Shown in pieces: positions 1 through 8,010 of a stretch of 64,000 nt of DNA. Source of the stretch: Vitrella brassicaformis CCMP3155 (taxonomy: Eukaryota > Protista > Chromerida); contig CDMY01000316.1 in assembly GCA_001179505.1 (NCBI GenBank), forward strand, positions 60,561 to 124,560. The letters run 5' to 3'. The notes beneath the pieces are model-generated. The model made no database searches. It was not told the DNA's origin and saw only the letters and a program-made list of their open reading frames with translations. The translations under genes were made by a program, and so were the position numbers. The number at the start of each line of letters is the position of its first letter. The first letter of the stretch is position 1.

Positions 1-572
1 CAATGAACGAAGCTCAGACGTGGGAGGCTGGGCGGGAGAGGAAGCGGGAGCTGCCCTCACCACCACGGATGACTGGCAACCTCCTTCTACTTTGCTCCTG
101 GTTTTTCGGTCGCGTCTGCGAGTCATGGGGGCCTGCGTGTGTGGGTGTGCGGGGTGGGTGGGTTGGCTGCCTGTCAGTGTGTGCGCACGTGTCTTGCGCG
201 AGTCGATTTGCTGCACGTCTGTCTTTCGTGTGTCGGCTGTACAAAAGCACTCATTGTTCGTCGTGTCAGTCAACGATGGGACTCGATGACAGACAGACAC
301 ATCGAATACTGACTGTACGTCACACGCACACAAAAACGACTGCAACTAAAGACTAAAGGGAGGGAGGGAGAGAGGGAGGGAGAAAGGAGAAAGGCACAAC
401 ACAGCACAGCAAACGTGCGCCGGCCCATATGGATGGATGGATGGATCAATACTGCTCCTTGATGACATGTACTCTGGCTGCCCCACTGATGCATGCTGGC
501 CGACACGCATCACATGCACACGAAAGTACGAAGGAAGGGGTGCAGGAGCACACGATTACACAACACACCCAC

Positions 573-628
573 ACAGCATGCCCGCCCGTATGCAAGCATG
601 ACAGCATGCCCGCCCGTATGCAAGCATG
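573..628. repeat. 28-bp perfect tandem duplication (x2)
   Basis: acagcatgcccgcccgtatgcaagcatg occurs at 573-600 and 601-628, downstream of the ORP stop. Confidence 0.9.
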
Positions 629-1146
629 CAATCATATCGGTGAATGCCACTGATTTCTCTCTCTGTGTGTTTGCGAGCCATCCAGGACGAATCTTCGCTG
701 ACGTAACAACACGTCAGCAAATACGCGTTCATGGTGTCTCTCCTACACACAGGAGAAACAATCATCCCACCGACGACCAATCGAAGCAATTAAGTGCTGC
801 CTGTCTGGTTGCCGTGTCTGTCTGTCTGTCTGTTCTACTCTACCTCTCGGTGTGGTCGTTCGCTGCACGTACGTACGTTCCGAGCTGCCTGCTGGTGGAC
901 TGGACTCCACCCCGATGGAAGCTCTCCTCCCAACGGCACACTGTGACTCCACTTGCAGTGTGTATGCAAGCAAGGTCGCACTACGCCGTCCAGAAGTCAG
1001 CATCCATCAGGGTGGGAGCAAAACCACCGAAAACGCAGAATGTCCCTCTCGACGGCAAATCAACCACACGCCACGCAAGGATGTCCACAAGACACGATGA
1101 GCGCATGTATGTAGCAAAATCATCCTTCAGTCAGTCAGTCAGTCAC

Positions 1147-4100
1147 TCAATTCTGCTCCTGTGCGGTGCGGTCTTCGCCCACCTCCCCACCACCGCCACC
1201 GCCCCCGCCCCCTTCATGCCCCTCATGCTCCTCGGCCACTCGCGGCGTCCCGCTAACAGACGTCTCCCTTGTTCTCGGCTGGTGCTCCTTGCCCACGCCG
1301 CCCGCTTCAATGCCAACACCACCAGTGGCACCGCCCTTGGTCGCCGCACTGGTAGAGTCCTGCGACAGCGCCGCTGCGCGCGATGACGACACGTTGGGCG
1401 CAGACGAGGAAGGGGGCGACACCGACGAGTCGGGGGACAGGGCCCTGCTGGGCGAGAGTGCTGGAGGGGTGGGAGGTGGCGTGGATGTGGGTCGGGGAGG
1501 GGGCGGTGCCTTCCTTCTCAGGGCGCGTTCGTATCGGTGTCGGTCTGAGATGCGGTCCTTGGCCTCTTGGGCGGCTCGCACGCGGCCCTCCGTGAGCAGT
1601 AGCAGGTCTTCGCGCAGGGTGGAGTCGGACTGCAGGAGGGCCTCGTCGGCCACCGGCAGCAGGGGGTAGTTGGGCGTCGTGCGGATGTCCCAATAACGCA
1701 CATTGTCGAAATCGAGGTAGCCCAGCCACGTACTGAGACCAAACACAGGCACAGGCAGACACGTGTGTTGGTGTTGCTGCGGGCGGGGGGCCAGGGGGCA
1801 GGTTTGGGTGTGTGTGTGGGTTTGTGCCCACCCGTTGACTCTGCTGAGTATGTCGCCGTAGCTGTCTTTGATGGTGCCCTCGAAGTAGTCGGTGGGCTTC
1901 CCCCGGACACTGCCAAACACATACTCACACGAGTTGCCTACACACATACACACACACACACGCAGACAGACAGACAGACAGACGAGATCGATGCACATGA
2001 AGCATGCAGGTCGATTTACCTACCCAGTGAGTCCTCCACACGCATCCTTCCGAGGATCTCGTGGCGACACACAGGGCCGTACAGAGTGCCTGAGTGCCAC
2101 ACCACATGCGTTGAAAAGCGAGCCGTTGCACACACCCACCAATACATGGATGGATGGCTACCCCTTGTGTGTATTTCACCTACCTGTCCAGACGTCCCTG
2201 GGCAGTTTGGTCATGGTGACGGTGTGCCCGTCGGTGAAGTCGACGAACCGCTTCCCCGAGTTGTACAGGTGCATCTGGTTCAGAATGGCGTAGGCGCTGA
2301 AGATCGAGTACCCCCAAAACAGAAAACGGTCCTCCGCACCCACAATCTGACAAAGGCACATGGACAGATGGATGGATGGATGGAAGCGTCAAATGTGCCT
2401 GTGGCTACTCACCTGCCAGTGGGTCGTTTGGGGCACGTGCGCTGTCTGCTCTGAGTAGATGCGGGTGCCGTCTGCAGGCGGCAGAGAGACACAGTGACAA
2501 GCACAGCCACGTGCATGACGCCGCCAACATACACAGCGGCACAACACACACATACCTGGGAGGAAGGCCTGGTAGGTCTCCCCGAGAGTGGGGTTGATCT
2601 GACCATTACCAACACAGACCACAGACCACACACAGACATGAGAGCGGTGTCTACGCGTGTGCGCCACGCCATCGATGATCACGCCGACTCACACACCGGT
2701 TTGAGGAAGTCTGAAGTGACGTGCAGTGAGGCAATGTACATGGCGACCACCAGCTTGAGCCGCTCAATGGGGTTGCGACTCGCGGCAGCTCGACGCAGAT
2801 ACAATGGCACGTACGCTGCACGGTGAGGGACAGCCAGACACACACACACACACATACATACACACACGAGTTAACCTAACGCCCACACAGCCCACCCACC
2901 GAGCACACAGCGTGGAGCTGTGTCGGTCGCTTACTGCATGCGAGGGTGGTGGTTTGGAGTGAGGATCCGGGCTTGCTGCAGCGAATGGGGAACGATATCC
3001 GAGTCAGGTTGAAGTTGCCTGCAGAGGGAGGGAAGCAATGGGGGGACAGACAAAAGGCAGCAAGATGTCATCCGTGAGCCGCTTGATGAAAGGTCGAATG
3101 GAAAGCAATGCATACCCGAGAGAATCTGCCGCCCAATCCACTTGAGCACTTCCTGCATCGACACACACACACACACGAGCACACTTCCCATCTCCTCTCA
3201 ACTCATCTGCACCGAGCTGACCTTGGCCACAGACCGCACCAGCACAAAGGTGTCTCGATCGGCCAGCAGCAGACCCCCCTTGGCGTCGGTGGTGACGTCA
3301 CAGCAGGCGGGGCATTTGCGCGACCTGAGCCGCACGGTGCGGCCCGATGCGGGCCCCACCGATGTGGCTGTTGCGATGCGGAAGTCGTCACGGGAGAAGG
3401 GATGCACCCACTCGTCCACCTCCTGATCACAGTGACAGAGAGTGACAGCCTGAGTGTGCGTGTGTGTCTGTGTGTGTTGGTAGGTTGGTAGGTTGCCTTG
3501 AGTATTCCTTCGGGGTGCGCCTCGTCCCTCGAGAAGCACAGACTCTCACGCGCACGACGCACCACCTGGTTGTCAACACACAGCACAGTACTGCTTGACA
3601 GGTGTCATCACATCAATCCCCTCATATATTTCAGTGCGTAGGCCGACCGATTTGGCGTCGCATTCGAATTCCGAGTCGTTGATCATGGCGTCCATCAGGC
3701 CCTCGCTCATGGGATCTGCCGCATAGACACACACCACACACGGCAGACGTCAATATGTGCACTGGTGCATGTGTTGTGTCGGTGTCGGTGAGCGGCTCAC
3801 CTCCCCTCTCGAGGTAAGTGGCGGTGATTGATGTGTCGGAATCGTCCTGTGTGGGCAAGGCACGACAAACAAGAATCGCACACAGGCACACATCAGACAG
3901 ACGCTGGATGAGCCTCTGCGTGTGTGGCGGGGGATGGGCGGTGGGCGATTTACCCCGTCCGAGTCGATGTCGAAGAAATCGGGGTTTGCGGACAGCTGTG
4001 TGTCTAGTATGCGGTTGATGGACGCCTGCACCTCCGGCAGTCCCTTGGTCTGGTCAAGCAGCGCCCTCAAACTCACCGTCAACCTAAAGACATGTAGACA

Positions 4101-6280
4101 GACACCAGACACACCAGGTGTGTGGGATCGCTGCCACCCGTTCCGTTCCCCGCGCCGCGCCCTTTCCCTCATTATATCTGCGTACGTACGCCTTTTGTAG
4201 CCTCGTTTGCGCACTCACCGCGCCAACGCCCCCGCCATCCGCTATATGAGGTCACACACAGGCAAGGCAACCACTGAGCATCTTTTGACCCTCAACACAC
4301 CCCGCCCACCGACCCACCTGGTGCATTTGACACGTTCCTCCGGTGCCTCCTCTCGCTCCGCCGCTCCCTCGCTTCACCACCCACACGCAGTCCTCCACCC
4401 CCTGCCGCCGTTGTTGTCGGCTCGGGTGAGGGTGACTCGTCCATTGACGCCTCGACAGGCTGATGACCCGCATCAGTCACCACCGAGATCACTCCACCTG
4501 GAGAGAGGGAGCGTCCGCACATCCATCCATCCATCCATCCATTCGTGTGGATGGATGTGTTTGGCTTGCGTGCTGCGGGCGGCTGGCTCACCTCTATCGG
4601 CGATTTGTGTTGGGAGTGTTGCCGATGGGGGATGGGAGGTGTGTTGGTGCGGTGGGGGAGGAGGGGGTGGGTAGAGGACGGCCATGATGGTCCGGGGGGT
4701 CTCTATCAGCCCACGGGAGGTCTCGGTCACCAAGTCAAGCACACCTGACCAACACACACAGACACACATGGCAGATGGGATGTGTGTGTGCGTGCATCTG
4801 TTTGCGGCTGACATACCTACCAGCAATAGGTTTGCAGACGAGGTATGCGATGCCTTTTACGATGGCCAGCGGCAGCCTCTCCAGCCCGCCGCCCTTCTGC
4901 AGCTCCTGCAGCGGACACGTCAATGGGCCCAACACACCACCTGGCACAGCACACACCACACACAAGTGTGCAAGTCGATCAGCCAGCCAGGGAGGGTGGA
5001 TGTTTGTGTGGATGAACGAACGTACCGAGCACTTCAGCAGTGAACAGTATGAGTCCCCGGACCAGCCCCTGTGTGACGTCAGACGGGCGGCTGGAGCGGT
5101 CGCGATACGACTCATACGGCGGGTCATCAGGCCTCCTAAACACACACACACACACGCACACACGCACACACAGACAAAACACAACACAAGGGAACAATTC
5201 TCATACATCACTTTTCCTGCCTGCCTGTGTGGCGGGCGTCTCTGCCTGTACTTGCCTGAAGACGACGACTGGGCCGTCTCTGAGCATGTCGCTGAGGTTC
5301 TCCAAGCCCCAAAGAACCCTCTCCACAAGGGAGGCCACCAAACCCACCACCCACACCAACACTGACCCATCCACATCTGACAGACACAATCACACAACCA
5401 CACAACCACCCACAGTCCAGCCACCACACCACACGGTGCTCAAGGCCACACACCACAACTAGCGGCTGGTGGGTGGATCTTTCTCACCCTGTCTGATGGA
5501 AGGAGAACGATTGCTCCTGGGCGGTGCGATGATGGCCGGCCGTGTCCGTGTGCGGCTTGAGGAGGTTGTGGGCGGGGCAGCGGCAGCGGAGGGCATGGCG
5601 TGTGTGAACGCCTGGTAAAGGTCGTGGTACTCCCTCTTGGTGCCCGCCGTCACCTGGTAGACCTCACCACGCTCCCCGTGGACGCGGAACGAGAACGCAT
5701 CCTGACACGCTGACACACACACAGACACACACACACATGACATGCATATGCAGCCTGCACTGAGGAAGGGAGACCGACGGACGCGTGGGCGCGTGGGTGT
5801 GCTTACATGTCCACTCCGCGGGTGCCAGAGGCGCGACCTTCTGGATCCTGATCTCACGAAGGACCCGGGAAGACGGCCGCTGCATTGAGATAGACAGACA
5901 GGCAGACAGACAGGCGAGCAGATCTGTCAACAAACCGGCATGCACCTCCAGTGCACTCACCGCAGCCCACCTGGTGAGTGGTCATCTTCCCACGTTGCAC
6001 ATCGAGAGTGAAGAAGAGCTGTTTCAGGACGGGCCCCTCGTCCGTCGGCCCCTCCACCACTCGCCAGATCCGCCCCTCCCTGCTGCCGCCGCTGACACTG
6101 CTACTGTGGCCATTGCTGTTGGTGTTGCCTCGGATCTGTGCCGGCACTCCGACGCCGTTGTCCTCTCGCGGCGACACCGAGGGGTCTTCGAACTGCTGGT
6201 ACTCCCGCATGCCGCCTGCCACGCCGCCCTTGGTCATCATCATTGCCGGCCCCTCCTCGCAAGAGATGCATTCACCCATA
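1147..6280 (-). CDS. Multi-exon OSBP-related lipid transfer protein: N-terminal PH-like domain, VPS13/ATG2-type ATG_C-like helices, C-terminal ORD
   Basis: Spliced exons give ORD hallmarks: EVLKWIGRQILSG-NFNLTRISFPI, RNPIERLKLVVAMYIASLH, KP-INPTLGETYQ, SEQTAHVPQ, TWLGYLDFDNVRYWD, QSDSTLREDL and AQEAKDRISDRHRYER, stop at 1147. PH-like exons lie at 5500-6050 (VLKQLFFTLDVQRGK...AFSFRVHGERGEVYQVTAGTKREYHDLYQAFTH). The ATG_C-like segment is at 4680-5135. Intron phases are consistent throughout. The 5' end is uncertain (ATG near 6280). Confidence 0.85.
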
Positions 6281-6379
6281 TACAATGATGATACCCTGGC
6301 GACGTCAAGGCTGGTGCCTGGTGTGGCCCTGGCAACGGCGGAAGGAGAGATCTGCCGCCTCCTTTTCAAGCTCGCAATG

Positions 6380-8010
6380 AGGACTCAAGAGGAGTCGCGA
6401 TTGGACTGTGTGCAATAGCCTGTCGGCATTCGTGTTCGACGCAGGTGAAGCAGCTGACTCGACAGGTCTGGCGTATCATCCAGGGCGTCAGCCACCATCA
6501 GCCCGGTGACTTCCATCTCTCTCATGGGGTCGTGTTTCCTCCCAAGACCTGCAGAAAGGAAAGGCCTGGCTGGCGGCAAGAAGGCCCCGTGCGAGAACAA
6601 GAGCACCGAAGATATAGGGAGGCGGTGACTTAGCGGCAGACTACCTGCGAGGGAACGGCAATGGGTCAGCTGTGACCAAGAAGGGCTGCTGTACACCAAG
6701 AAGGAGAGGTCAGGCACCGCACCCACGGCACACGGCCACGAAGACTGTCGTGTGTTGGTCTGTGTGTCACGCCGCATGTGTGTATGTGCGCAGACAGACT
6801 GGAGGCTCAGGACGTGAAGGACTAATCAGACGACTGACTCGAGTACGTCACTGCCGAGTGATTGAGCGATCCACGCATGGCACCATCGTGTGTGCTGCTG
6901 GTGCAGTCTCAGCCACGATTATGTGTTGGCGTCGCTGGCCACTCCTGCTGAAGTGCATGAGTTGGAGTGAAACCGGTGGCTCGTCGAGCTAGCTCATGGA
7001 GACGGCCGTCGAGCTCAGCATGCAATGCCGCTGCAGAGCGGCGCATCCAAACCCACTAAGGCACCCGCAGCCGAGCAGCCGAGCAGCCGAGCGCCGCAGA
7101 AGCTGCTGCGTGTGCCTCCACGCCGACATCCGCTGCTGAAGGGTGGGATGAGAAGGGAGGAACACGCGACGCACCATCTTCATTGCATCTCTGTATGTAT
7201 CGCTTCCTCGTGTGCACCAATCAGGTGTGGCGTGCCAGTGTGTGGTGGGATGCCAGTGAGTGCTGTTGGACGAGTCGTCGACGGAGGAGCAGCTGCTCCT
7301 CTGAGGCAATACAAGACTTCGTCAGCGAGAGCGGTCCGTATGGTGACCATTAGGCATCCCGCTGGATGTACGTGTCTGTCTCTGTCGCTGTGTGTGTGTG
7401 CCAGGTTGGAGTGAGTGTGACATCTCTCGTGTGTGTCAGATGACGGACGGACGAGTCCGTGGAGTCCGAGGCCTCACAAGAGCACCACGCCCTGCAGCAC
7501 GAGTCATACATATCCATCTCTCCGTTTGCCTGTCTGCCCATCGCTGACTGCTACTCCTCTGGAGTCGCTCAGCAGCATCGCAGCGGTGGATGCCAAACGG
7601 GCGCCGGCCGGCCATCCACGCCGCTCTCCGTCACGCCGCACTCGAGAAGGAGGAGACGGCTGGTGCTGCTGCTGCCTATGGTGATGGCGGGGAGGGCACG
7701 TGCGCCACGTGCCTCACTTTCTGCAGTCGTATTCTTGCCATTTCTGCAGCAGGTCAGTCACGACGCACACGACGGTGACGATGGATCACGCACGCTGCAC
7801 ACCCATTCTTACCTTGCTGTTGTGTGTTGTATGTGTGCAGGAGTGTCTGTGTGAGGGTTGCTGCCGTGACATGACGGCAAAACACGAGGCGGCTGTAGCT
7901 CTCATGCGCCTCTGGCGCGCACTCGAATCAGTGGCTGTGTACGTGTGTCTGTGCGTCTGTATTTGTGACAGACTTCTTCATTCGGCTGCGTGCCTCATTG
8001 CTATGTTGTG
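6380..8010 (+). other. Unresolved plus-strand spliced locus (hypothetical gene or decayed gene)
   Basis: Several plus-strand intron-like units (gt...tgtgtg...cag at about 6710-6793, 7369-7405, 7753-7840, 7938-7970) flank exon-like pieces such as ECLCEGCCRDMTAKHEAAVALMRLWRALESVA. I could not build a stop-free model. Confidence 0.3.

What the first reader, a model, noticed from the sequence alone, without database searches (positions are those of the whole stretch)
1147..6280. PH + VPS13/ATG2-type ATG_C module + OSBP lipid-transfer domain in one gene
Seen: splicing 5135-4680 gives RSSRPSDVTQGLVRGLILFTAEVLGGVLGPLTCPLQELQKGGGLERLPLAIVKGIAYLVCKPIAGVLDLVTETSRGLIETP. From memory this aligns almost gap-free with the VPS13 ATG_C helices (QP...EG..RG...G..G..T.P..G.QKGG...KG.......P.GG..D....T..GI). 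Intron phases stay consistent from the PH-like exons through this segment to the ORD. Known: ATG_C belongs to bridge-like lipid transfer proteins and targets lipid droplets or packing-defect membranes, while ORDs are shuttle-type carriers. I know of no described ORP carrying ATG_C. Inference: a hybrid contact-site lipid exchanger that docks on lipid droplets or organelles through a borrowed VPS13 module.
Basis: partly seen in the sequence, partly recalled or inferred. Interest (0 to 1): 0.85.

Follow-up and report, generated by a model that had tools for sequence, protein, structure and literature searches.

The report
Oxysterol-binding protein carrying a VPS13 membrane hairpin
This alga (Vitrella brassicaformis) gene makes one 1038-residue lipid-carrier protein of the oxysterol-binding family that also carries a short membrane-gripping helical hairpin otherwise known mainly from the giant lipid-bridge protein VPS13, and the same unreported combination is conserved in ciliates.

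Summary
The minus-strand gene 6279-1147 has 23 exons. One spliced public transcript contig covers all of them. The 1038-aa product is identical to Vitrella brassicaformis CEM02035.1 (UniProt A0A0G4EVE0, named only "PH domain-containing protein").

- **PH domain (aa ~66-168):** it folds as PH. All 50 best structure matches are PH domains.
- **OSBP-related domain (aa 634-919):** Pfam Oxysterol_BP, E=5.5e-27.
- **VPS13-like segment (aa 254-337):** it matches only human VPS13A and VPS13C among 177,635 PDB sequences (E=2.4e-5). With a 4-member family profile the E-value is about 1e-13 to 1e-14. It scores 71.8 bits against an environmental VPS13, versus at most 11 bits for 5000 shuffles. The match is to the second helical hairpin of the VPS13 ATG2_C motif, next to the VPS13 PH domain.

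Pfam gives no ATG_C hit. It also misses the ATG2_C region of a genuine VPS13, so that negative says little.

The architecture is not unique to Vitrella. Stylonychia, a Logan transcript and 13 mostly ciliate metagenome loci show the module followed by an ORD. Paramecium keeps a degenerate version.

Membrane or lipid-droplet docking is inferred, not shown.

I rate it a new variant of a known kind, of moderate to good interest.

The parts
1147..6279 (-). Whole coding region: 23 exons, 3117 nt, 1038 aa plus stop. Exons (minus strand): 6279-5971, 5879-5807, 5709-5488, 5376-5256, 5135-5026, 4940-4821, 4744-4592, 4497-4318, 4241-4190, 4083-3954, 3846-3801, 3715-3648, 3565-3497, 3422-3222, 3152-3116, 3018-2935, 2815-2697, 2598-2556, 2471-2413, 2346-2184, 2089-2024, 1937-1832, 1732-1147.
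   Evidence: Splice joints and contig pieces of runs X6 and X1. Model built. Identical to public protein P0001.
6259..6279 (-). N-terminal MGECISC: Gly2 with Ser6 (N-myristoylation consensus) and Cys4/Cys7 (candidate palmitoylation sites).
   Evidence: Read from the sequence. The acylation is inferred from the general MGxxxS/T rule and was not tested. The ciliate relatives lack it.
5588..6084 (-). PH domain, aa ~66-168 (exons 1-3).
   Evidence: The AlphaFold model has five strands and a C-terminal helix at pLDDT 60-73. All 50 best VIA-align matches are PH domains, Z 8.6-10.7, including ORP11, ORP8 and Osh3 PH. Pfam PH gives no hit. UniProt names the protein 'PH domain-containing protein'.
4674..5374 (-). 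ATG2_C-like helical module, aa 203-342 (exons 4-7): three predicted helices at 203-240, 262-293 and 298-342.
   Evidence: AlphaFold on the 4-sequence alignment A2 gives mean pLDDT 77. Hydrophobic moment is 0.45-0.52, in the top 0.5-5% of 18-mers of the protein.
4689..5101 (-). Core of the module, aa 254-337: the hairpin homologous to the second helical pair of the VPS13 ATG2_C motif.
   Evidence: phmmer against PDB sequences finds only VPS13A (E=2.4e-5) and VPS13C (E=1.3e-4). The 2-member profile gives 2.5e-10. The 4-member profile gives 3.6e-14 and 3.7e-13, with the next hit at 0.9. BLASTP against an environmental VPS13 gives E=5e-10. Shuffle control: 71.8 bits against at most 11.
3960..3980 (-). 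FFAT-like candidate, D482-FFDIDS-488, within an acidic stretch of the disordered linker.
   Evidence: Pattern scan. It is present only in Vitrella and not in the relatives. VAP binding is inferred and untested.
1507..3152 (-). OSBP-related ligand-binding domain. The Pfam match is aa 634-919; the conserved lid region starts at about aa 619 in exon 15.
   Evidence: Pfam Oxysterol_BP E=5.5e-27, 95 bits against a cut-off of 28.9. phmmer finds ORP1, ORP2, Osh6 and ORP3 ORD structures at E=1e-12 to 1e-10. Family alignment.
2428..2451 (-). Degenerate OSBP fingerprint EQTAHVPQ (aa 720-727), in place of EQVSHHPP.
   Evidence: Alignment to human ORP1 and to the relatives, which keep EQISHHPP or EQVSHHPQ.

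Best explanation
The locus is a single expressed gene of Vitrella brassicaformis for a multi-domain OSBP-related protein (ORP).

**Layout (shown):** an acylation-type N-terminus, a PH domain, a three-helix amphipathic module, a long acidic disordered linker with one FFAT-like motif, an ORD, and a low-complexity tail. The last two helices of the module are homologous to the second hairpin of the VPS13 ATG2_C motif.

**Distribution (shown):** it belongs to an alveolate ORP subfamily, found in Vitrella and many ciliates, in which this VPS13-type hairpin sits between the PH domain and the ORD.

**Most likely mechanism (inferred):** the ORD shuttles a lipid between two closely apposed membranes. 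The PH domain, the ATG2_C-like amphipathic helices and, in Vitrella, the N-terminal acyl groups hold the protein on one membrane. By analogy with the ATG2_C of VPS13A and VPS13C, the helices would insert into lipid monolayers or bilayers with packing defects, such as lipid droplets or curved or stressed membranes. The FFAT-like motif may hold the other end at the ER through VAP.

The Vitrella ORD has lost the second histidine of the EQVSHHPP signature, so its PI4P counter-exchange may be altered. The ciliate members keep the canonical signature.

The confidence given is for the whole statement. The architecture, the single transcript and the homology alone I put at about 0.9, and the membrane-docking mechanism at about 0.5.
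For: - **One transcript:** the spliced contig of run X6 spans all 23 exons and its arithmetic fits the model exactly. The product equals the public protein.
- **ORD:**
- **PH fold:**
- **Homology to VPS13:** VPS13A and VPS13C are the only significant PDB-sequence hits. The E-value improves stepwise as family members are added, from 2.4e-5 to about 1e-9-1e-10 to about 1e-13-1e-14. P0007 alone gives 1.5e-9. A genuine environmental VPS13 (L020) aligns at E=5e-10. Composition-preserving shuffles reach at most 11 bits against 71.8.
- **Position of the match:** VPS13A chain residues 1379-1479 of 1625 lie directly before the last 144 residues. This fits the published ATG2_C at 2866-3029 and PH at 3031-3174 (bioRxiv 10.64898/2026.01.07.698282).
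- **Conservation of the architecture:** P0007, P0008 and P0009 (Stylonychia). In 13 metagenome loci the module is followed by an ORD on the same strand, and 6 of them also have the PH-like part upstream. Paramecium keeps a colinear remnant.
- **Amphipathic helices:**
- **Known function of ATG2_C:** binding of lipid droplets and damaged membranes (PMC12081312) and support of VPS13A's membrane association in flotation assays.
Against: - Pfam gives no ATG_C, VPS13 or PH hit on P0001, P0007 or the isolated module, even at E<=10. A true VPS13 ATG2_C region also gets none, so this weighs little.
- Only about 80 residues, one hairpin, align with confidence. The full four-helix ATG2_C is not demonstrated.
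- The order PH then hairpin is the reverse of VPS13 (ATG2_C then PH).
- There is no structural confirmation. ATG2_C is not modelled in the solved VPS13 structures, and Foldseek finds nothing for the module.
- Exon 6 alone finds no relative other than itself among 1.84 billion representatives.
- The FFAT-like motif and the acylation motif are seen in Vitrella only, and their roles are inferred.
- The Vitrella ORD fingerprint is degenerate, so transport activity is not assured.
- There are no localisation or binding data.
Confidence: 0.6

Rival explanations
1. The hairpin is homologous to VPS13 ATG2_C, but here it works mainly as an intramolecular regulator or a protein-binding element rather than as a membrane anchor. 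For example, it could mask the PH domain or the ORD, or bind a partner.
For: In VPS13C the ATG2C-PH region acts as a brake on the VAB domain and releases it when the membrane is perturbed (PMC12081312). The module lies directly after the PH domain. Its hydrophobic moments are only moderate at 0.45-0.52. In the AlphaFold model the three helices pack on one another.
Against: In the cited work the same ATG2_C helices bind lipid droplets, damaged lysosomes and liposomes directly. Regulation there is coupled to membrane binding and is not an alternative to it. No partner or interface is known here.
Confidence: 0.2
2. In Vitrella the protein is a lipid sensor or tether rather than a PI4P-driven exchanger, because its ORD has lost signature residues.
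For: The fingerprint is EQTAHVPQ instead of EQVSHHPP, and LEEKQR is replaced by ISDRHR in the alignment to ORP1. The ciliate relatives keep EQISHHPP.
Against: The lid, the KPxNPxLGETY motif, the first histidine and the conserved Lys and Arg of the C-terminal helix are retained. The Pfam score is well above threshold. Residue roles are taken from knowledge of Osh4 and ORP structures and were not tested here.
Confidence: 0.15
3. The resemblance to VPS13 is convergent or compositional: glycine-rich amphipathic helices that merely look alike.
For: The segment is rich in Leu, Gly and Val. Pfam profiles do not score it. No fold match is available.
Against: 5000 composition-preserving shuffles of a real VPS13 ATG2_C reach at most 11 bits, against 71.8 for the profile and 36.3 for Vitrella alone, and the reversed sequence scores below 0. 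E-values improve with each added family member. VPS13A and VPS13C are the only PDB hits and the next best is 0.9. The alignment is nearly gap-free over about 85 residues.
Confidence: 0.03
4. The architecture is an artefact: two neighbouring genes joined by a chimeric gene model or a chimeric assembly contig.
For: A contig across two genes does not by itself prove one transcript (caveat). The run's type is not on record as RNA.
Against: The reading frame is continuous over 23 exons with no stop. All introns are removed in the contig. The same order of module, linker and ORD occurs in Stylonychia, in a Logan contig and in 13 metagenome loci with few or no introns.
Confidence: 0.02

Closest known systems
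ATG2_C (ATG_C) amphipathic motif of VPS13A/VPS13C (human VPS13A residues 2866-3029)
   Same: There is significant sequence homology over about 85 residues to the last helical hairpin of the motif. The shared pattern is G..G...G..G....P..G..K.G....G..KG..G...KP..G..D....T..G. The helices are amphipathic.
   Different: Only the second of the two hairpin repeats aligns with confidence. It is not attached to a repeating-beta-groove bridge. It follows a PH domain instead of preceding one. Membrane binding is untested here.
Canonical long ORPs (OSBP, ORP1L, yeast Osh3): PH - FFAT - ORD
   Same: A PH fold at the N-terminus, a disordered acidic linker with an FFAT-like motif (Vitrella only), and a C-terminal ORD with the lid, KPxNPxLGETY and the C-terminal Lys/Arg helix.
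   Different: An extra VPS13-type helical module lies between PH and ORD. Vitrella has an N-terminal acylation-type motif and a degenerate EQVSHHPP fingerprint. By ORD sequence the closest relatives are ciliate ORPs, at 36-37% identity.
Fungal sterol glucosyltransferases with an ATG_C-like region (stated in Levine 2022, bioRxiv 10.1101/2022.07.06.498983, citing Grille et al. 2010)
   Same: They are a precedent for an ATG_C-type helical region outside bridge-like lipid transfer proteins.
   Different: They carry a different catalytic or transport domain (a glycosyltransferase, not an ORD) and belong to a different lineage. I did not compare sequences with them.
ATG2 C-terminal region
   Same: It is the namesake of the motif. 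The literature describes the amphipathic helices as shared with VPS13.
   Different: No ATG2 chain appeared among the PDB-sequence hits at E<=10. The module is therefore of the VPS13 type as far as tested. I could not confirm that ATG2 sequences are present in that library.

Membership tests
OSBP-related proteins (ORP/Osh), Pfam PF01237 | Match to the Oxysterol_BP profile above the gathering score | tested here: met
   E=5.5e-27, 95 bits against a cut-off of 28.9, aa 634-919. ORP1, ORP2, Osh6 and ORP3 structures are hit at 1e-12 to 1e-10.
OSBP-related proteins (ORP/Osh) | Signature EQVSHHPP, with the two histidines used for PI4P binding (from knowledge of Osh4/ORP structures) | tested here: not met
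   Vitrella has EQTAHVPQ: the second His is Val and the last Pro is Gln. The relatives P0008 and Paramecium have EQISHHPP.
PH domain | Seven-stranded beta sandwich capped by a C-terminal helix | tested here: met
   AlphaFold model of aa 60-345 at pLDDT 60-73 in this part. The top 50 VIA-align hits are all PH domains, Z 8.6-10.7 over about 100 residues. The model confidence is only moderate.
PH domain | Match to the Pfam PH profile | tested here: not met
   No Pfam hit at E<=10 for P0001 or for aa 60-180. UniProt nevertheless names it a PH domain-containing protein.
ATG_C, Pfam PF09333 | Match to the Pfam ATG_C profile | tested here: inconclusive
   There is no hit for P0001, its module, or P0007. 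The positive control also fails: the complete ATG2_C of a genuine VPS13 (L020 1637-2458, which matches VPS13A at E=1e-23) also gets no Pfam family at E<=1.
ATG2_C motif as defined on VPS13A/C | Sequence homology to the motif (VPS13A 2866-3029) | tested here: met
   The match covers the C-terminal 80-100 residues of the motif. Mapping to native numbering assumes that PDB chain 9yg5_B ends at residue 3174. This fits the full-motif alignment of L020 to chain residues 1322-1477 and the published boundaries.
ATG2_C motif as defined on VPS13A/C | Bundle of four amphipathic helices (two repeats of an antiparallel pair) | tested here: inconclusive
   Three helices are predicted. Only the last pair aligns strongly, at 65.7 bits. 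The first repeat gives weak repeat-type matches only. BLASTP extends weakly into helix 1.
ATG2_C motif as defined on VPS13A/C | Binds lipid droplets or packing-defect membranes | not testable with these tools
   Only hydrophobic moments could be computed: 0.45-0.52, with 2.6-5.5% of shuffles reaching them.
VPS13 / bridge-like lipid transfer proteins | Chorein_N cap and repeating beta-groove bridge, VAB domain | tested here: not met
   Pfam finds nothing but Oxysterol_BP in 1038 aa. The rest of the protein is a PH fold, helices and disordered linkers. It is not a VPS13 family member.
FFAT-motif proteins (VAP clients) | EFFDAxE-like core in an acidic tract | tested here: inconclusive
   DFFDIDS at aa 482-488 is followed by DGDDSD. 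It was not scored with a dedicated FFAT matrix and is absent from the relatives.

The most novel reading that the evidence does not exclude
The second hairpin of the VPS13 ATG2_C motif is an autonomous, portable membrane-defect and lipid-droplet targeting unit. An alveolate ancestor grafted it onto a shuttle-type ORP. This created a conserved ORP subfamily, from ciliates to chromerids, that combines the membrane-docking device of bulk lipid bridges with a one-lipid-at-a-time carrier. It may serve alveolate-specific membranes such as the alveolar sacs or inner membrane complex.
Probability: 0.4. Interest if true: 0.7.

Novelty: new variant of a known kind. Interest (0 to 1): 0.6.

Why it matters
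ATG2_C is currently discussed as part of the delivery end of bridge-like lipid transporters. There it inserts into the acceptor membrane and senses damage or lipid droplets.

Finding half of it, conserved, inside box-type carriers of a whole eukaryotic lineage has three consequences:
1. It suggests that the hairpin is a self-sufficient targeting unit.
2. It provides a small, natural minimal version to test what the motif recognises.
3. It defines an unannotated ORP subfamily in alveolates, a group that includes ciliate models in which localisation and knock-outs are easy.

It also shows that current Pfam models miss this motif even in a genuine VPS13, so its distribution is probably underestimated.

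Tried and rejected
- **Pfam on single exon translations** had no power. Only the last exon gave a weak Oxysterol_BP hit.
- **First hand-made gene model** had two wrong junctions. The transcript joints corrected them.
- **Exon 6 alone against PDB sequences** found nothing.
- **Exon 6 alone against 1.84 billion representatives** found only the protein itself and one spurious bacterial LRR protein (P0002).
- **Word-based homologue search with the Vitrella module** found only itself. The family was reached through the ORD search and then through P0007.
- **Foldseek of the module model against the PDB** gave only non-specific helical hits. This is expected, because ATG2_C is disordered and unmodelled in the VPS13A cryo-EM structure.
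- **The ESM Atlas feature search** gave only leads: an ATG2-related cluster at 0.88 and a VPS13_C cluster at 0.83, both below the level to trust.
- **Four literature searches** found no description of an ORP with ATG_C.
- **Earlier scan notes** hold nothing on this gene.
- **Two readings rejected:** compositional resemblance and a two-gene artefact.


Full report
**What is in the sequence**

The minus strand between 6279 and 1147 reads as a GC-rich, intron-dense eukaryotic gene. I first spliced it by hand. I then laid public runs on 1100-6400.

- Run X6 holds one 4802-nt contig (record 12) in which the introns are removed. It begins at 6357, 78 nt before the ATG, and continues past 1100.
- Run X1 holds a second, partial spliced contig.
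- The joints confirmed most of my junctions and corrected two. Exon 8 ends at 4318. There are two more exons, 4241-4190 (52 nt) and 3565-3497 (69 nt).
- The 3565-3497 exon and the exon 4 donor use GC-AG introns. I inferred this from the length arithmetic of the contig pieces.
- With these corrections, every piece of record 12 falls on the predicted transcript position: 5971 at record position 387, 4744 at 1034, 4318 at 1366, 3422 at 1732, 2346 at 2275 and 1732 at 2610.
- The contig therefore carries all 23 exons in one continuous 3117-nt reading frame.

They keep the frame open.

**Identity**

A search of 1.84 billion representative proteins with exon 6 alone returned one true hit, P0001, 1038 aa and 100% identical.

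- P0001 is letter-for-letter my transcript-guided model.
- It is CEM02035.1 / UniProt A0A0G4EVE0 of Vitrella brassicaformis CCMP3155, named only "PH domain-containing protein".
- Its precomputed Pfam annotation is PF01237 alone.

**The three claimed domains**

*ORD.* Pfam Oxysterol_BP scores E=5.5e-27 over aa 634-919. ORP1, ORP2, Osh6 and ORP3 structures are hit at 1e-12 to 1e-10.

*PH.* Pfam gives no hit. An AlphaFold model of aa 60-345, built on a 6-sequence family alignment, shows five strands and a capping helix at aa ~89-165 with pLDDT 60-73. The exhaustive VIA-align search returns PH domains in all 50 top rows, at Z 8.6-10.7. These include the PH domains of ORP11, ORP8 and Osh3.

*VPS13-like segment.*
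- phmmer of aa 195-345 against all PDB sequences finds two proteins and nothing else. They are human VPS13A (E=2.4e-5) and VPS13C (E=1.3e-4). They align to aa 254-337 with one gap.
- Adding relatives makes the match stronger. The 2-sequence profile gives 2.5e-10. The 4-sequence profile gives 3.6e-14 and 3.7e-13, with the next hit at 0.9.
- The metagenome scan also picked up a genuine VPS13 fragment, L020. Its two ORFs match VPS13C 3184-3414 and the whole VPS13A region at chain residues 1322-1477, the latter at E=1e-23.
- The Vitrella module aligns to that VPS13 at E=5e-10.
- The family profile scores 71.8 bits on it and Vitrella alone scores 36.3. The maximum over 5000 composition-preserving shuffles is 11.0 bits, and the reversed sequence scores below zero.

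**Which part of VPS13**

The VPS13A-XKR1 cryo-EM preprint defines the ATG2_C motif as residues 2866-3029 and the PH domain as 3031-3174. It reports that the motif is disordered in the map and supports membrane association.

- The VPS13A chain in the PDB has 1625 residues.
- The match ends at 1477-1481, exactly 144-148 residues before the chain end.
- If the chain ends at the native C-terminus, which is my assumption, the match is about 2928-3028.
- This is consistent with the full-motif alignment of L020 to 1322-1477, which would be about 2871-3026.

The strong alignment (65.7 bits) covers only the second helical pair. The first pair of VPS13 gives weak, repeat-type matches. Levine's analysis describes ATG_C as two repeats of an antiparallel helix pair of about 75 aa.

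AlphaFold predicts three helices in the Vitrella module, at 203-240, 262-293 and 298-342, with mean pLDDT 77. Their hydrophobic moments are 0.45-0.52. These are in the top 0.5-5% of the protein and are reached by 2.6-5.5% of shuffles.

**The Pfam negative**

Pfam indeed gives nothing for P0001, for the excised module, or for P0007. The same scan also gives nothing for the complete ATG2_C region of the genuine VPS13 in L020. The test therefore has no power here, and I do not count it against homology.

**The architecture is a family, not a one-off**

- By ORD sequence the nearest proteins are Paramecium ORPs at 36-37% identity, and an environmental protein, P0007.
- P0007 carries the module ahead of its ORD.
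- Searching with P0007's module found P0008 (a Logan contig, 1008 aa) and P0009 (Stylonychia lemnae, 1063 aa). Both have Oxysterol_BP.
- P0007's gene call is truncated. A PH-like part lies just upstream in another frame of the same contig.
- A pattern scan of JGI and ENA metagenome contigs found 20 loci encoding the module.
- In all 13 loci with enough downstream sequence an ORD follows on the same strand. Six of them also show the PH-like part upstream.
- The remaining loci are too short to tell, or, in the case of L020, are VPS13.
- Most loci are AT-rich, and many have in-frame TAA/TAG codons inside the conserved regions, as in ciliates with reassigned stop codons.
- Paramecium ORPs keep a colinear but shortened remnant. 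It lacks the Gly/Lys loop and is not significant on its own.

**Other features of the Vitrella protein**

- It starts MGECISC. This is a myristoylation-type Gly2/Ser6 with two cysteines. The acylation is an inference, and the relatives do not share the motif.
- The linker holds DFFDIDS followed by an acidic run. This is an FFAT-like candidate seen only in Vitrella.
- The OSBP fingerprint is EQTAHVPQ, and the LEEKQR helix reads ISDRHR. The ciliate members keep EQISHHPP.

**How it most likely works**

*Shown:* the architecture, its expression as one spliced transcript, its conservation, and the homology of the hairpin.

*Inferred:*
- The ORD carries a lipid between apposed membranes.
- The PH domain and the amphipathic hairpin fix the protein to one of them.
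- The hairpin inserts where lipid packing is loose. Published work shows this for the ATG2_C of VPS13C (lipid droplets and damaged lysosomes) and of VPS13A (liposome flotation and simulations).
- A regulatory role, as in the VPS13C autoinhibition described, is the main rival and may coexist with membrane docking.

**Comparison with what is known**

This is an ORP by membership, with the ORD profile met. It is not a VPS13 or bridge-like protein: there is no Chorein_N, no beta-groove and no VAB. It carries a piece homologous to part of the VPS13 ATG2_C motif.

ATG_C outside bridge proteins has one cited precedent, fungal sterol glucosyltransferases. Four full-text searches found no description of the motif in an ORP. 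A Toxoplasma contact-site review lists ORPs with PH and FFAT only.

**Verdict**

I rate it a new variant of a known kind, with interest 0.6.

Noticed in passing
window 5136-5255 and 3423-3496 (minus strand): Two of the 22 introns appear to be GC-AG, with donors GCAAGT and GCAACC. This is inferred from the length arithmetic of the spliced contig and from identity with the public protein. These two joints were not among the rows printed.
   Followed up: partly
window 4745-4810 (intron between exons 6 and 7): Contigs of runs X2, X6 and X8 match about 20-30 bases here and then run on into unrelated sequence (loose ends at 4750, 4773 and 4807). This suggests a short dispersed repeat inside the intron.
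   Followed up: no
window ~4520-4550, ~2365-2395, ~2150-2165, ~430-450: GGAT/CCAT tetranucleotide microsatellites recur in introns and downstream of the gene. Long (TG)n/(GT)n tracts precede many acceptor sites.
   Followed up: no
window 1-1146 (minus strand, downstream of the stop): The X6 transcript contig is 4802 nt long but reaches window position 1100 at its position 3242. About 1.56 kb more lies downstream. This is either a very long 3' UTR or read-through into a neighbour beyond the window start. Other contigs break at 1127-1149, within a GACT repeat.
   Followed up: no
L020 1637-2458 and 13-1479: This is a GC-rich environmental VPS13 C-terminal fragment, confirmed against VPS13A and VPS13C. 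It gets no Pfam family at all at E<=1. The Pfam models used here miss the ATG2_C region and the adjoining bridge end of a genuine, divergent VPS13.
   Followed up: partly
L001/L003 105-620: The public gene call for P0007 starts at an internal Met. The PH-like N-terminal part of the same ORP lies upstream, split over two frames, probably by a short intron.
   Followed up: partly
P0003-P0006 (Paramecium ORPs), aa ~190-255: These closest ORD relatives keep a shortened, degenerate version of the hairpin. The Gly/Lys-rich loop is deleted and KPxAG is changed to NPF(N/T)Q. This suggests relaxation or loss of the module in that lineage.
   Followed up: partly
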